Positions 1 through 6,953 of a stretch of DNA of 61,179 nt are shown piece by piece. Every line of letters begins with the position of its first letter. Position 1 is the stretch's first letter. This DNA is from Perkinsus chesapeaki ATCC PRA-425. Its lineage: Eukaryota; Protista; Perkinsozoa. The DNA lies in the NCBI GenBank assembly GCA_013115145.1, contig JAAPAO010000152.1:1-61179 (forward strand), in the 5' to 3' direction. The position numbers and the translations under genes are program-made. A model generated the notes under the pieces. It did no database searches and was not told where the DNA came from. It worked only from the letters and a program-made list of their open reading frames with translations.

Positions 1-632
1 CGTGCTGTCCGTGCACGCGTGCCGCTTATTGACGACCACAACTAAACTTGTCTACTTCGTAAACCTCACATATAGTCCGCTGGCCGCCGTTGCATCTCTC
101 GTGTGTAGCGCAGAGACGTCAACACAATGGGAGTCAAAAGGCAAGAAAATGTGGAGCAGTAACCTGCTAGGTTCGACATCGATTTCGCGGTAGCTTGCCA
201 GTTGAATTCTATGTTAAAGCCTCAGAGCATTCTTACGACAGAACATTACCGATATACTCCTGGAATAAGAGCGCGACGTCGCCTGATTTCAAGGCAGATG
301 ATTGAAGCTCGAACCGGACAAACTATGAGAATTCACGCCCCGCTGAGACTCAGCCGCTGGCAACCGGGACACCTTACCGGTGCGCATACGTGCGTGACCG
401 AGAAACCGACTAGTCCGGAATTTACTTCGAAACACGCCGTGTGCTGAAGAACAACGGTATCGCTGAAAGAGCCGTGCCGCCCTTGATGCACTCCGAGGGG
501 AAGAAGAATCTCGCCAGTTTGATATAACAAGATCAGCTCTAATTCGCCTCACTGTTTTGGTTCCGCGATTCGCGCTCACTCTGTCATTGTTAAGCTAGTT
601 CGGAGACGAGTAGTTGAAATTTTACTTCTTAT

Positions 633-1631
633 ATGTGGCAAAAGCTTCGCAAACTTTCCCTCTTGCTCTCCGCGGCAATGGCTATCAAGTCCGCCAAAGA
701 AAGCCCATCTTATGCTGGTACTCCACCACCTTCGAACGACCCTTTGTACTCGGAGCAGGCACCATACATGGAAGCCATCAACCTTCCAGGAGCTTGGAGG
801 CGCCTGACATCGACCAGGGTGGGGAGGCACAGAGTTATTGTGGCAGTCGTAGACACTGGGGTGAAAAAGGACCACCCCGATCTAGTTGGTAACCTTGTCG
901 AGGGCTACAATGTGGTCATGCGCAATAGTAGTACTGATGATCAGACTGGGCATGGTACCTCTATGGCTGGTATCCTTGGTGCCAAGATCAACAATTCTAT
1001 TGGTTTAGCCGGTGTTATGGACCTCGTAAGCATTATGCCCATCTCTGTTGGTAGAGACTTCACGGAACAGACTGAGTCTCTAGCTGTCGACTACGCCATC
1101 CGCAACCAGAAAGGAAAAGGTATCAAAATACTAATCATGCCATTCTCAGGCGAAGTAGAGAGGCCGTTGTTTATCAAGAAACTTAGAGAAGCCGACAAGG
1201 CGGGTATACTTATGATAGTCTCTGCTGGGAATACAGGAAGTAACACTACCATCAACAAAAGATTTCCTTGTGCTCTGACTACAGAGCTTAATGGAATGAT
1301 ATGTGTCGCGGCAACCGAGCAGGTGAAGATGAGGTTGTCCGAGCTCTCGAGTTTCGCTAACTATGTTGACATCGCTGCACCAGGCGTGAACATCGTTACT
1401 ACGGGTAGGGATAAAACGTATCCGAAATTCGGAGGAACATGTCCAGCGGCGTCAATTATCGCTGGTGTTGCTGCGATACTCTACAGTATTGCACCCGGTC
1501 TGTCTTCTCGTGACGTGAAGAACATTCTCAAGGATACCGCCAAGAAGGGCCTCGAGGATAATACTGGAAAAGTTACTCTCCCATTCGGACGTGTTGATGC
1601 TGATGCGGCTGTAGCGAGGCTTATTCTATGA
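633..1631 (+). CDS. Peptidase S8 (subtilisin-like) protein, single exon, catalytic Ser replaced by Cys
   Basis: Signal-like N-terminus. VAVVDTG (D74), GHGTSMAG (H107), SAGN (oxyanion N200), DIAAPG, and GGTCPAASIIAGVAA at the GTSMAxPHVAG position (C270, TGT at 1440-1442). Confidence 0.92.
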   Translation: MWQKLRKLSLLLSAAMAIKSAKESPSYAGTPPPSNDPLYSEQAPYMEAINLPGAWRRLTSTRVGRHRVIVAVVDTGVKKDHPDLVGNLVEGYNVVMRNSSTDDQTGHGTSMAGILGAKINNSIGLAGVMDLVSIMPISVGRDFTEQTESLAVDYAIRNQKGKGIKILIMPFSGEVERPLFIKKLREADKAGILMIVSAGNTGSNTTINKRFPCALTTELNGMICVAATEQVKMRLSELSSFANYVDIAAPGVNIVTTGRDKTYPKFGGTCPAASIIAGVAAILYSIAPGLSSRDVKNILKDTAKKGLEDNTGKVTLPFGRVDADAAVARLIL

Positions 1632-4883: not shown

Positions 4884-6724
4884 TCAATTGTGCTTGGGAT
4901 GATCCCTTTGTTGGAGGCGTGCTGCTGCTGCAGCCATCCTCTTCTGCTCCTTCCTCACTTTCATACTGGTCGATACAGCAGCGGCACCAGCAGCTCCACA
5001 GGCCCCTTGATGAGTCAGATTAGAGAAAAACAGGAAGTTGGGATTCCCAGTGTTCCGACCAAGCCACAGTAAGGTCATCGCCGGATGAAGTAACAAAGCT
5101 GAAACGGCCGAAAGATACGCCATGATAGATGCGTCTCGATGGGCCTACTCATTGTCCCCACAGAGAGGAACAGGATCATGTACTGCTCATAGTTGTTGGG
5201 CTGCTGCTTCTGCTTCTGCTCTTGTTGCTTGTCGGCATCCTCAGCTGGCTGGCTGTCCCCTTCCTCATAAATCTTAGTAAAGCCCTCGACGGAAGTGAGG
5301 TCTTTAAAGTGTAGCAGTAGAAGCTCGCACAGCATGACGTAGTCCAAAGCCTGATGATGAAGATAAAGGCAGCTAAGAGGAGACTTATTACCGTTGGATA
5401 TGGCTGGAAGAGAACACAAAGGGACATTACACTCCAGGTATGGGCTCTGAAAGGGAAGATAACATACGACGATATGGGGAGGAGGGTAAAATGGATTCTA
5501 GCTTTACCCATGGCGATGGGCTACTCAAAAAAGGACTACTAGGACTAGTACCAGGATACCTGGTACTAGTCCTAGTACTCGCTGGGATAGTTCAATGGAC
5601 GGTACTAACGCTCGATATAAAGGCTAATACCTTGCAGCACAGTGTTAAAGATGACGCACATGAAACCGTAAGATACTCCTCGAGAGGGGCAAACACGAAT
5701 GACAACTTACTGTCGGGCATACTCGCCACCATGGGCCCCAAGACGGAAGTAGATGGGCAGGACGTGGGTTAAAGGCAACAGCTGGAACACGAAGAGGAAT
5801 AGGGAATAGAACCTGATAATAGAGTGTCGGGGGGATGCCAGGGGGGAGGGGGGTTTACCGAGGGAAGACCTCTGTGAAGATGTACCAATGCAGCCCTATA
5901 TTAGGCTGAAGCTCACTCATCAGAAAGGGGTCTATGTAGGTGCCTCGAAGCGATGCCCAAAACGCCTCTACATCGCCCATAATGACAAAGGAAGCTGCCA
6001 GCAGTGATGCTAGGAAAATACCTGAAGAGGCTTCTATGGGATCAAGAAAGGGGGGCCTACCGGTGGAGAGGGCATTGCGCATGAGAGCACTCCAAAGGCT
6101 GCTGCCACGTTGCCCGGGTGAAGCCTCCATGGCCGACTTAGATAGCAGCAAGGCGAATGGAAGGAGGGGGTTGCATCTTATATAGGCAAGAGAGGCTATT
6201 GAAATGCATCCCAGCAAACCAGGAGTGAGACATCCAGCCACCAGTGCCATCTGAAGGCTTTGGCCAGATAGGGCGAGGCATGATAAGAGACTAATGGGGT
6301 TGAAGAGGTACGCGGATGGAAGGAACAGTGATGAACCTCGGGATGCTATATAGAGGGCAATAGCACACACAACGTCAAAGAGGGCAAGGACCACCACCGC
6401 GCTCCATTGACCAGGCAGAATACTTGAAGTGAACGAGTGGGCAACGAGGACCAATGGGGGCTCATGGAAGAGACTACCAGCGTAGGGATCGGCACCTGAT
6501 GAAGGGTAGTAGCTTAGATGATGAAGGAAAGGAGCGGTACCAGTTTTAAAGGCAGCTGTAGCCTCCTGAAGCCTTTCATGGCTATTGATAGGAGAGTTAA
6601 GTTCTAGGATATGCTGTAGTATCGAAGGTGCGCCTAGGGAACTGAATAACAACAACCGAAAAGAGAAGCCAGCCACACATATCCATGCCAAACACCGTCG
6701 ACTAGCTGGACACGACGCTCTCAT
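4884..6724 (-). CDS. PIGU: GPI transamidase component PIG-U, multi-exon
   Basis: Motifs DPYAGSLFHEPPL, PNIGLHWYIFTEVFPRF, LFQPYPT and TGNPNFLFF in successive exons; multi-TM protein. Confidence 0.85.
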
Positions 6725-6953
6725 GGCTAAACCGAAAAACTATACAGGAATGGAGGATCCAGCAACTCCTCTCGACGCGACCCAACTCAACCCAGAGCAT
6801 GCCAGGTGCTGCATCACGGTCATGCAGGGGGGGAAGAGGAAGAAGGCCTCGACTTCAGGCAGTCGCTGCGAAATCGGGCCGCCGTTCGTCTTGCGTATGC
6901 TCCTCAGACGCCCTCCCTTTCTCGCTCATTCGCCTAAAAAAGCCGCTGGTGGT

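What the first reader, a model, noticed from the sequence alone, without database searches (positions are those of the whole stretch)
1425..1475. Natural thiol-subtilisin candidate: catalytic Ser to Cys in a peptide-ligase-like context
Seen: D74, H107 and oxyanion N200 are intact, but the nucleophile motif reads G-T-C-P-A-A-S-I-I-A-G against canonical G-T-S221-M-A-S-P225-H-V-A-G. Position 221 is Cys (TGT, 1440-1442), 222 is Pro and 225 is Ser. Established: engineered S221C subtilisin loses most amidase activity, and S221C/P225A (subtiligase) favours aminolysis. From memory, and to be verified, M222P also occurs in later engineered ligases. Inference: this secreted protein may be a naturally evolved Cys-nucleophile acyl-transferase/ligase or a regulatory pseudoprotease. 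The ORF is otherwise intact.
Basis: partly seen in the sequence, partly recalled or inferred. Interest (0 to 1): 0.85.

Follow-up and report, generated by a model that had tools for sequence, protein, structure and literature searches.

The report
Natural cysteine-nucleophile subtilisin in Perkinsus
A shellfish parasite (Perkinsus) carries an intact, transcribed and selectively maintained subtilisin-type protease gene whose catalytic serine is a cysteine, in an active-site helix that matches lab-made peptide-ligase subtilisins; its chemistry is untested.

Summary
Window 633-1631 (+) is an intact 332-aa S8 subtilase ORF with Asp74, His107 and Asn200 in place and TGT (Cys270) where thermitase and subtilisin have the nucleophile Ser. 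Contigs of two DNA data sets from different studies show TGT and no alternative. The genome is a Perkinsus, closest to P. chesapeaki.

The gene is not a lone accident. Three P. chesapeaki paralogues and one P. marinus paralogue also carry Cys there, and no non-Perkinsus S8 domain examined does. A codon-model reconstruction puts TGT at the base of a seven-gene subclade (P about 0.98), with later returns to Ser through TCT, TCG and AGT.

This gene's own branch has dN/dS 0.27 against a background of 0.24, and neutrality is rejected (p = 0.004). An RNA contig with a spliced leader shows a trans-spliced mRNA.

The "ligase-like" Pro222 and non-Pro225 are family-wide, so they predate the Cys. They probably made it tolerable.

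Best reading (about 0.5): a working thiol-subtilase with shifted reactivity. Rivals are an inhibitor decoy or non-catalytic binder, a dedicated ligase, and slow decay. No enzymology exists.

This scan had already noted two neighbouring Cys paralogues on another piece of the genome (s1-225843).

The parts
70..322 (+). Upstream segment shared with the paralogue array. It shows that the gene is one unit of a segmentally duplicated subtilase family.
   Evidence: It is 90.6% identical to L001 8984-9237, which lies upstream of paralogue P0002.
612..613 (+). AG trans-splice acceptor. The spliced leader joins at about 614, leaving a 19-nt 5' UTR before the ATG.
   Evidence: Run X7 holds a 226-nt RNA contig that equals window 612-819 with 0 mismatches. 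It is preceded by 18 nt, CGTAGCCATTTTGGCTCA, which is the DinoSL-type spliced leader (SL sequences in PMC3101222). The best known paralogue is only 82% identical over this stretch.
633..1631 (+). CDS of a 332-aa prodomain-less thermitase-like S8 subtilase with a Cys nucleophile (stop codon included).
   Evidence: The AF2 model has pLDDT 90 and pTM 0.88. Foldseek matches thermitase at TMt 0.91.
633..698 (+). Signal-peptide-like N-terminus (residues 1-22) followed by a short linker. The mature domain starts near Asn35, so there is no I9 propeptide.
   Evidence: The AF2 model shows a low-confidence helix at residues 2-22 and disorder up to about residue 31. The thermitase alignment starts at query residue 35, which pairs with mature thermitase residue 4. 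The signal-peptide assignment is inference.
852..854 (+). Catalytic Asp74 (GAC), in the motif VVDTG.
951..953 (+). Catalytic His107 (CAT), in the motif GHGT.
   Evidence: The column is invariant in alignment A1.
1230..1232 (+). Oxyanion-hole Asn200 (AAT), in the motif SAGNTG.
1440..1442 (+). Cys270 (TGT) at the nucleophile position (BPN' position 221).
1443..1454 (+). Pro271-Ala-Ala-Ser274, equivalent to BPN' positions 222-225. Pro at 222 and Ser at 225 match residues favoured in engineered thiol-subtilisin ligases.
   Evidence: Alignment to 7AM3 (GTCPASAHVAG) and 7AM5 (GTCPASNHVAG); PMC7921005. The pattern is family-wide.

Best explanation
This is a genuine, transcribed and selectively maintained member of a Perkinsus-specific expansion of signal-peptide-bearing, prodomain-less, thermitase-like subtilases, in which the nucleophile is Cys. 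The Ser-to-Cys change (TCT to TGT) most likely happened once at the base of a small P. chesapeaki subclade. It was kept through substantial divergence and was reversed to Ser several times. A similar change arose independently in P. marinus. It was tolerable because the whole Perkinsus family already lacks Pro225 and Met222: the family motif is GTS-P-A-A-A/S-I-V-AG. Those are the same helix changes that protein engineers introduced to make room for the larger sulphur and restore activity in thiol-subtilisin. I therefore expect Cys270-His107-Asp74 with Asn200 to form a working triad that acylates through a thioester. By analogy with engineered thiol-subtilisins, its general amidase activity should be lower than in the Ser paralogues, and its esterase or acyl-transfer activity should be retained or relatively favoured. 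Shown here: the sequence, the reads, the mRNA, the fold, the clade structure and the selection. Inferred: catalytic competence, the shift in reactivity, and secretion.
For: 1) TGT is present in contigs of two independent DNA data sets with no alternative letter. 2) Transcription: a spliced-leader-bearing RNA contig matches 612-819 exactly, and a second RNA contig from another library matches 896-1085 exactly. The best paralogues are 82% and 95% identical over those stretches. 3) Cys recurs in P0002 (TGT), P0003 (TGT) and P0006 (TGC) of P. chesapeaki and in P. marinus XP_002775635.1 (TGT). The P. marinus copy is sister to a Ser (TCA) paralogue with 99/96 support. 4) Marginal codon reconstruction gives TGT at the ancestor of the seven-gene clade with P=0.98-0.99. 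AGT-Ser occurs only in P0004, inside that clade; the other 13 Ser copies sampled (11 outside the clade, plus P0001 and the pseudogene inside it) use TCN. 5) Selection, from my own GY94-F3x4 branch model: the window tip has omega 0.27 against background 0.24, and omega=1 is rejected (LRT 8.25, p=0.004). P0002 has omega 0.39 (p=5e-4). For the pooled intact Cys tips, omega=1 is rejected with 2dlnL=20.2. Counting private changes gives 5 synonymous and 3 nonsynonymous for the window gene, against 6 and 25 for the neighbouring pseudogene. 6) All five Cys copies keep Asp, His and Asn. In contrast, 7 of 11 S8 domains with a non-nucleophilic residue at this position have also lost His or Asn (for the P0006 locus). 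7) Every inferred change at this codon is between Ser and Cys, never to another residue. 8) The helix motif GTCPA is identical to engineered peptiligase M222P, and 225-Ser was a favourable variant there. 9) The predicted fold is a confident canonical subtilisin.
Against: There is no biochemical evidence of any kind. RNA contigs did not cover the Cys codon and their depth is very low (2.8 and 4.4). Purifying selection is equally compatible with a non-catalytic binding function. The same array contains decaying copies: a pseudogene with an in-frame stop, a frameshifted Cys copy (P0006), and P0003, which has omega about 0.6 and no ATG at the homologous start. Pairwise omega within the young five-gene clade (0.32-0.44) is somewhat relaxed. 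The ancestral-state result rests on 10 sampled paralogues, on a single-nucleotide-step model and on one AGT codon, and it ignores gene conversion among tandem copies. Engineered S221C subtilisins are poor amidases even with P225A.
Confidence: 0.5

Rival explanations
1. It is a non-catalytic or barely catalytic binder, namely a paralogous decoy. The protein folds and keeps its substrate cleft but turns over substrates very slowly. It is secreted to soak up host subtilisin inhibitors, such as the bivalve I84 family, and so protects the active Ser paralogues. Alternatively it binds some other ligand.
For: Bivalve I84 inhibitors bind tightly to subtilisin and to the Perkinsus protease perkinsin, and they correlate with host resistance (PMC9198434 and PMC2868825), so an arms race exists. 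Thiol-subtilisin has drastically reduced activity (PMC7921005). Purifying selection and an intact cleft are just what a decoy needs. The family is a large tandem expansion. An unchecked scan note reports a fully triad-less intact subtilisin in this genome (s1-238532).
Against: A decoy has no need for a nucleophile, yet this codon only ever toggles between Ser and Cys, and Asp, His and Asn are kept in all five Cys copies. Three lineages returned to Ser, which implies that the site remains under nucleophile-type constraint. No binding data exist.
Confidence: 0.25
2. It is a dedicated natural peptide ligase or transpeptidase. In this reading the thioester acyl-enzyme is resolved mainly by amine nucleophiles, for example to cross-link or cyclise parasite wall or secreted proteins, as a natural counterpart of subtiligase or omniligase.
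For: Positions 221, 222 and 225 read Cys, Pro and Ser. Each is a ligase-favouring state in the engineered series, and the motif GTCPA is identical to structures 7AM3-7AM8.
Against: Pro222 and non-Pro225 are shared by the Ser paralogues, so they were not selected for ligation. His217 and Trp189 of omniligase are not matched: the residue aligned to position 217 is Phe266. No activated-ester substrate is known in this biology. No partner or substrate gene lies next to the gene; the neighbours include a PIG-U homologue and unassigned ORFs. Repeated reversion to Ser argues against a committed new chemistry.
Confidence: 0.1
3. It is a neutral, slowly decaying duplicate. The Ser-to-Cys change disabled a redundant copy, and the ORF is intact only because too little time has passed.
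For: The tandem array contains clear pseudogenes and one Cys copy (P0003) with omega about 0.6 and a lost start codon. The gene is absent from the public protein set searched, with no hit at 90% identity or above.
Against: Omega=1 is rejected on this gene's own branch (p=0.004) and for the pooled intact Cys tips. Cys is inferred to be ancestral and retained across dS of about 0.9-1.0 between P0006 and the rest, with omega 0.22-0.28. A trans-spliced mRNA exists. There is an independent Cys copy in P. marinus, with pairwise omega 0.38 against its Ser sister.
Confidence: 0.12

Closest known systems
Thermitase-type S8A subtilases, including the Perkinsus extracellular serine protease family (perkinsin and 'thermitase, putative' paralogues)
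   Same: The fold is the same (TMt 0.91 to 1thm), as are the order Asp-His-Asn-nucleophile and the motifs DTG, GHGT and AGN. Identity is 82-84% to P. chesapeaki paralogues and 39-45% to P. marinus ones.
   Different: The nucleophile is Cys and not Ser. There is no I9 propeptide. Pro replaces Met222 and Ser replaces Pro225; the last two differences are shared with the Perkinsus family but not with most bacterial relatives, where 225 is Pro in 58 of 68.
Engineered thiol-subtilisin, subtiligase (S221C/P225A), peptiligase M222P and omniligase-1 (PDB 7AM3-7AM8)
   Same: Positions 221, 222 and 225 read Cys, Pro and a small polar residue. The motif GTCPA is identical.
   Different: This protein is natural and only about 25-30% identical overall. 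It lacks the L217H, F189W and I107V changes and the stabilising mutations. Its 222 and 225 states predate the Cys. No ligation has been shown.
Natural Ser/Cys nucleophile interchange in other protease folds: PA-clan viral 3C cysteine proteases versus chymotrypsin-like serine proteases, and Plasmodium SERA papain-fold proteins with Ser in place of Cys (from my own knowledge)
   Same: In each case one fold and one triad geometry occur with either nucleophile within a homologous family.
   Different: Those are other folds and ancient splits. Here both states coexist among paralogues that are 82-84% identical at the protein level in one genome, and the change runs in both directions.
Brenner's 1988 proposal that TCN and AGY active-site serine codons are linked through a TGY cysteine intermediate (from my own knowledge; the paper is not in the searchable library)
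   Same: All three codon classes (TCT/TCG/TCA, TGT/TGC and AGT) occur at the same catalytic position within one well-supported clade (100/99). TGT is reconstructed as the intermediate.
   Different: Brenner argued from deep comparisons between protease families. This is a shallow paralogue series and has not been tested biochemically.
Subtilase pseudoproteases, such as Clostridioides difficile CspA and CspC (PMC7200643, listed)
   Same: These are intact, conserved S8-fold proteins with a substituted catalytic residue.
   Different: The Csp pseudoproteases carry non-nucleophilic substitutions. Here the replacement is itself a competent nucleophile and the rest of the triad is intact.

Membership tests
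Peptidase family S8 (subtilases), subfamily S8A, thermitase-like | Subtilisin alpha/beta fold and a significant match to the family profile | tested here: met
   Pfam PF00082 matches at E=3.8e-36. The AF2 model has pLDDT 90, and Foldseek matches 1thm at TMt 0.91.
Peptidase family S8 (subtilases), subfamily S8A, thermitase-like | Catalytic Asp and His in the order Asp-His-nucleophile, plus an oxyanion-hole Asn | tested here: met
   Asp74, His107 and Asn200 align to the thermitase catalytic residues.
Peptidase family S8 (subtilases), subfamily S8A, thermitase-like | Serine nucleophile in the G-T-S-x-A motif | tested here: not met
   The residue is Cys270 (TGT 1440-1442). The protein is a homologue by descent but is not a serine peptidase by mechanism.
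Peptidase family S8 (subtilases), subfamily S8A, thermitase-like | N-terminal I9 propeptide acting as an intramolecular chaperone (typical of the family but not defining) | tested here: not met
   The mature domain starts about 12 residues after the signal-like helix. The same holds for the Perkinsus paralogues.
Thiol-subtilisin-type peptide ligases (subtiligase, peptiligase, omniligase; engineered) | Cys at 221 together with a non-Pro small residue at 225 | tested here: met
   Cys270 and Ser274. 225-Ser is reported as favourable in PMC7921005.
Thiol-subtilisin-type peptide ligases (subtiligase, peptiligase, omniligase; engineered) | Pro at 222 with His at 217 to enlarge the S1' pocket | tested here: inconclusive
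   Pro271 matches position 222, but the residue aligned to 217 is Phe266 and not His.
Thiol-subtilisin-type peptide ligases (subtiligase, peptiligase, omniligase; engineered) | Aminolysis of the acyl-enzyme favoured over hydrolysis (a high synthesis/hydrolysis ratio) | not testable with these tools
   This needs recombinant enzyme and peptide-ester assays.
Pseudoprotease or paralogous decoy | Loss of catalytic turnover with retained fold and ligand binding | not testable with these tools
   Only indirect evidence is available. The triad partners are retained in 5 of 5 Cys copies, whereas His or Asn is lost in 7 of 11 domains with a non-nucleophilic residue at this position.
Pseudogene | Disrupted frame, no transcript, omega near 1 | tested here: not met
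   The ORF is intact. A spliced-leader mRNA contig exists. Omega is 0.27 and omega=1 is rejected at p=0.004.

The most novel reading that the evidence does not exclude
Perkinsus harbours the first natural cysteine peptidases or transferases of the subtilisin fold (clan SB). In this reading a Cys-His-Asp subtilase lineage arose from Ser enzymes by one TCT-to-TGT step and worked well enough to be kept through long divergence. It then gave rise again to Ser enzymes through both TCT and AGT. That would be a living example of the Ser(TCN)-Cys(TGY)-Ser(AGY) route proposed for active-site serines, and a natural counterpart of subtiligase whose permissive 222/225 helix evolved first.
Probability: 0.4. 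Interest if true: 0.85.

Novelty: new variant of a known kind. Interest (0 to 1): 0.66.

Why it matters
Swapping the nucleophile in serine hydrolases usually wrecks activity, and I know of no described natural Cys-nucleophile subtilase. Four literature searches here found none, although that is not proof of absence.

If these proteins are active, three things follow:
- They would show how a permissive background, with no Pro225 and no Met222, lets evolution cross between serine and cysteine catalysis in small steps.
- They would provide natural scaffolds for peptide-ligase engineering.
- They would give a directly testable paralogue series (TCT, TGT, AGT) for a long-standing idea about how active-site serine codons switch class.

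If they are decoys instead, they bear on the protease-inhibitor arms race between Perkinsus and commercially important bivalves.

Tried and rejected
- A region-restricted homologue search on residues 245-300 was meant to pull out other Cys-motif proteins. It returned only 20 candidates and the three known paralogues, so it is not a survey.
- Four literature searches for natural Cys-nucleophile subtilases found only engineered cases.
- The triad geometry could not be measured, because model coordinates are not exposed to scripts.
- Pairwise NG86 dN/dS did not separate intact copies from the pseudogene (0.32-0.44 for all). I therefore counted private changes and wrote a branch codon model.
- I considered whether the window gene is an allele of the L001 pseudogene. 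At 90% nucleotide identity it is a paralogue.
- I considered that the RNA contigs come from paralogues. I rejected this for the sampled copies, because the best paralogues are 82% and 95% identical while the contigs match with 0 mismatches. Unsampled identical copies cannot be excluded.
- I considered mis-priming of a DinoSL primer on DNA as the origin of the leader. The genome shares only the terminal AG with the leader's 3' end, so trans-splicing is more likely. The T at the ATTTTGG position may still be primer-derived, since P. marinus leaders read ATCTTGG.
- The first sequencing-run run failed because the machine was busy, and I repeated it.

Full report
**What is there.** Window 633-1631 (+) is an uninterrupted 332-codon ORF. 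It matches Pfam Peptidase_S8 at E=3.8e-36 over residues 67-308. Its best solved relative is thermitase (1thm, E=4.7e-31), aligned from query residue 35 to mature thermitase residue 4. In that alignment the thermitase motif GTSMATPHVAG lies on the window's GTCPAASIIAG. So Cys270, codon TGT at 1440-1442, occupies the nucleophile position. Asp74 (852-854), His107 (951-953) and the oxyanion Asn200 (1230-1232) are in place. An AlphaFold2 model built on a 39-sequence alignment is confident (pLDDT 90, pTM 0.88). It has a low-confidence N-terminal helix at residues 2-22 and a disordered linker. Foldseek places the model squarely among subtilases, with thermitase at TMt 0.91, followed by Plasmodium SUB1 and deseasin. 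The protein therefore has a signal-peptide-like N-terminus (inferred) and no I9 propeptide.

**Is the TGT real, and is the gene expressed?** Logan contigs of two DNA runs from different samples and studies (X1 from 2020, X2 from 2022) cover the gene. Over 1420-1470 the word depths are 235 and 220, and no alternative letter is listed at 1440-1442. The five variants that are listed lie elsewhere. Contigs can hide rare variants, so this shows presence and not fixation.
- One RNA library (X7, a 454 RT-PCR metatranscriptome) holds a 226-nt contig that matches 612-819 with no mismatch.
- That contig carries 18 extra 5' letters, CGTAGCCATTTTGGCTCA. This is the dinoflagellate/perkinsid spliced leader; compare DinoSL and the P. 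marinus leaders in PMC3101222.
- The genome has AG at 612-613, so the leader joins 19 nt before the ATG at 633.
- A second RNA-type run (X6) has a 190-nt contig identical to 896-1085.
- The closest sampled paralogues are only 82% and 95% identical over these two stretches, so the transcripts belong to this gene or to an unsampled identical copy.
- The Cys codon itself was not covered by RNA.

**Where it comes from.** The best hits are Perkinsus chesapeaki proteins at 82-84% identity, followed by about 25 more P. chesapeaki paralogues at 48-69% and P. marinus 'thermitase, putative' proteins at 38-45%. No hit reaches 90%, so this exact gene product is not in the public protein set searched. FOL47_001943, 001944 and 001946 lie in one tandem array at a contig end, together with a truncated copy. 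The window gene is 86-90% identical in DNA to those copies, and its upstream 70-322 matches the spacer upstream of one of them. Downstream neighbours in the window are unrelated; they include a PIG-U homologue at 5858-6724 and ORFs without Pfam matches.

**Cys is not private to this copy.**
- In the 39-sequence alignment, Cys at the nucleophile also occurs in P0002 (GTCPAAS), P0003 (GTCSAAS) and P0006 (GTCPASA). P0001, P0004 and all other paralogues have Ser.
- An exhaustive HMMER search of 1.84 billion representatives, followed by a local read-out of the nucleophile column, gave Ser 307, Cys 4 and other residues 11 among 322 aligned domains.
- The fourth Cys is P. marinus ATCC 50983 XP_002775635.1. 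Its motif is GTCGATG and its codon is TGT.
- The P. marinus copy is sister to a Ser (TCA) paralogue inside the P. marinus clade, with 99/96 support. That makes it an independent Ser-to-Cys event in a second species.
- No non-Perkinsus domain among those examined has Cys.

**The ligase-like context is a family trait.** The Perkinsus consensus is GTS-P-A-A-A-I-V-AG. Position 222 is Pro in 17 Perkinsus sequences, and position 225 is Ala in 29, Ser in 5 and Pro in only 3. The non-Perkinsus (mostly bacterial or metagenomic) relatives have Pro225 in 58 of 68 and mostly Met222. PMC7921005 documents the engineering background:
- S221C alone cripples subtilisin.
- P225A relieves crowding around the larger sulphur; the double mutant is subtiligase.
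- M222P/L217H widens the S1' pocket.
- In a full 225 library, small polar residues including Ser gave better synthesis/hydrolysis ratios than Ala.

A search of the PDB with the 45-residue segment ranks the engineered ligases 7AM3-7AM8 third to ninth, and the alignment shows GTCPA as identical. The resemblance is therefore real. However, the permissive helix predates the Cys and is shared with Ser enzymes. I read it as a pre-adaptation that made the nucleophile swap tolerable, and not as evidence of selection for ligation.

**History of the codon.** The nucleophile codons are as follows:
- Window gene: TGT.
- P0002 and P0003: TGT.
- P0006: TGC.
- P0001: TCT.
- Truncated pseudogene: TCG.
- P0004: AGT.
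- Eleven further paralogues: TCA or TCT.

A DNA tree built without this codon gives a seven-gene clade (100/99) that holds P0004, P0006 and an inner five-gene clade (100/99). The protein tree agrees. Parsimony needs at least three Ser/Cys switches. Marginal reconstruction under a codon model puts TGT at the base of the seven-gene clade (P=0.98-0.99). On that reconstruction the window gene keeps the ancestral state, and Ser returns in P0004 (AGT), P0001 (TCT) and the pseudogene (TCG). AGT-Ser appears only inside the Cys-bearing clade. That is what a TCT-to-TGT-to-AGT path predicts, and it is the route Brenner proposed in 1988 for active-site serines (my own knowledge). Three caveats apply: only ten paralogues were sampled, the model allows single-nucleotide steps only, and gene conversion among tandem copies was not modelled.

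**Selection.** Pairwise NG86 dN/dS is 0.32-0.44 within the inner clade and 0.17-0.28 to P0004 and P0006, at dS of about 0.9-1.1. I wrote a GY94-F3x4 branch model for the ten-gene tree. Its estimates are:

| Branch | omega | Test of omega=1 |
|---|---|---|
| Background | 0.24 | - |
| Window tip | 0.27 | LRT 8.25, p=0.004 |
| P0002 | 0.39 | p=5e-4 |
| P0006 | 0.30 | not tested |
| P0004 | 0.26 | not tested |
| P0003 | 0.61 | not significant |
| P0001 | 0.63 | not significant |
| Pseudogene | 0.49 | p=0.02 |

For the three intact Cys tips pooled, omega is 0.45 and omega=1 is rejected with 2dlnL=20.2. Strict counts of private changes give 5 synonymous and 3 nonsynonymous for the window gene, against 6 and 25 for the pseudogene. 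The P. marinus Cys/Ser sister pair has omega 0.38. So this copy is constrained about as strongly as ordinary family members. Not every Cys copy is healthy, though. P0006 has a frameshift at a homopolymer, which the public gene model bridges with an intron. P0003 has no ATG at the homologous start.

**What it most likely does.** Three observations favour a site that still needs a nucleophile:
- Changes at this codon are only ever between Ser and Cys.
- All five Cys copies keep Asp, His and Asn, while 7 of the 11 domains with a non-nucleophilic residue here have also lost His or Asn. A rough one-sided Fisher test of my own gives about 0.03; it is confounded by the different ages of the lineages.
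- The helix is of the type known to restore activity to thiol-subtilisin.

I therefore favour, at about 0.5, a working Cys-His-Asp subtilase that acylates through a thioester. By analogy with the engineered enzymes it would have weaker general amidase activity and relatively better esterase or acyl-transfer activity. The main rival, at about 0.25, is a poorly catalytic binder such as a decoy for bivalve I84 subtilisin inhibitors, which are documented to target Perkinsus proteases. Selection data cannot separate these two readings. A committed natural ligase (about 0.1) is weakened because the ligase-like residues are shared with the Ser paralogues, no substrate system is evident, and the lineage reverted to Ser repeatedly. 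Neutral decay (about 0.12) is disfavoured by the branch test, the age of the Cys state and the mRNA.

**Novelty.** I found no report of a natural Cys-nucleophile subtilase in four full-text searches, and I know of none. Absence from this library is not proof. This scan had already noted two neighbouring Cys paralogues on another piece of the same genome (s1-225843). Those are very likely the array copies P0002 and P0003 that I examined. The present gene is a third intact copy, apparently unannotated, and it has the best evidence for constraint and expression. I classify the finding as a new variant of a known kind.

**Limits.** There are no coordinates for the triad geometry and no raw reads, only contigs. 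There is no RNA over the Cys codon and no signal-peptide predictor was run. The codon model is my own implementation and not PAML or HyPhy. The paralogue sample is incomplete.

Noticed in passing
L008 10001-11008 (P. marinus GG679899.1): P. marinus ATCC 50983 XP_002775635.1, annotated 'thermitase, putative', also has Cys (TGT) at the nucleophile, in the motif GTCGATGIIAG, with Asp, His and Asn intact. It is sister to the Ser (TCA) paralogue P0034, and the pair has dN/dS 0.38.
   Followed up: partly
L003 3940-4236 (P. chesapeaki P0004): P0004 is the only sampled paralogue that encodes the nucleophile Ser with AGT and not TCN. It sits inside the Cys-bearing clade, which fits a TCT-to-TGT-to-AGT codon path.
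   Followed up: partly
L002 6325-7319 (P. chesapeaki P0006 locus): This Cys (TGC) paralogue has a frameshift near a T5/A6 homopolymer at about 6800-6850. The public gene model skips it with an intron. It is either a pseudogene or an assembly error.
   Followed up: partly
L001 11910-12554: This is a truncated subtilase pseudogene at the contig end. It has an in-frame stop, a degenerate N-terminal half and Ser (TCG) at the nucleophile. It is the window gene's closest DNA relative, at 90% identity.
   Followed up: yes
L001 7630-8619 (P0003): This Cys paralogue has Leu at the position homologous to the start ATG. The annotated start lies downstream and removes most of the signal-like segment. Its tip omega is about 0.6.
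   Followed up: partly
window 633-1631: No protein at 90% identity or above exists in the 5.8-billion-sequence collection. The gene therefore appears to be unannotated, or modelled differently, in the public record.
   Followed up: no
proteins P0124, P0125, P0132, P0134, P0135, P0183 and others: Many of the top HMMER hits are giant proteins of 1,000-5,400 aa with 2-8 separate S8 domains. Some of those domains are degenerate at the triad. Their source organisms were not looked up.
   Followed up: no
alignment A1: P0016, P0028, P0038: Other catalytic-site variants occur in the family. P0016 has Glu for the catalytic Asp (IETG). P. marinus P0028 and P0038 have His at the oxyanion Asn position (AGH).
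   Followed up: no
window 612-632: The spliced-leader acceptor lies only 19 nt upstream of the start codon. The leader in the metatranscriptome contig has the DinoSL spelling (ATTTTGG) and not the P. marinus spelling (ATCTTGG). This may be primer-derived.
   Followed up: partly
window 5858-6724 (-): This ORF matches the GPI transamidase subunit PIG-U (Pfam PF06728, E=3.8e-31). It is an ordinary housekeeping neighbour.
   Followed up: no
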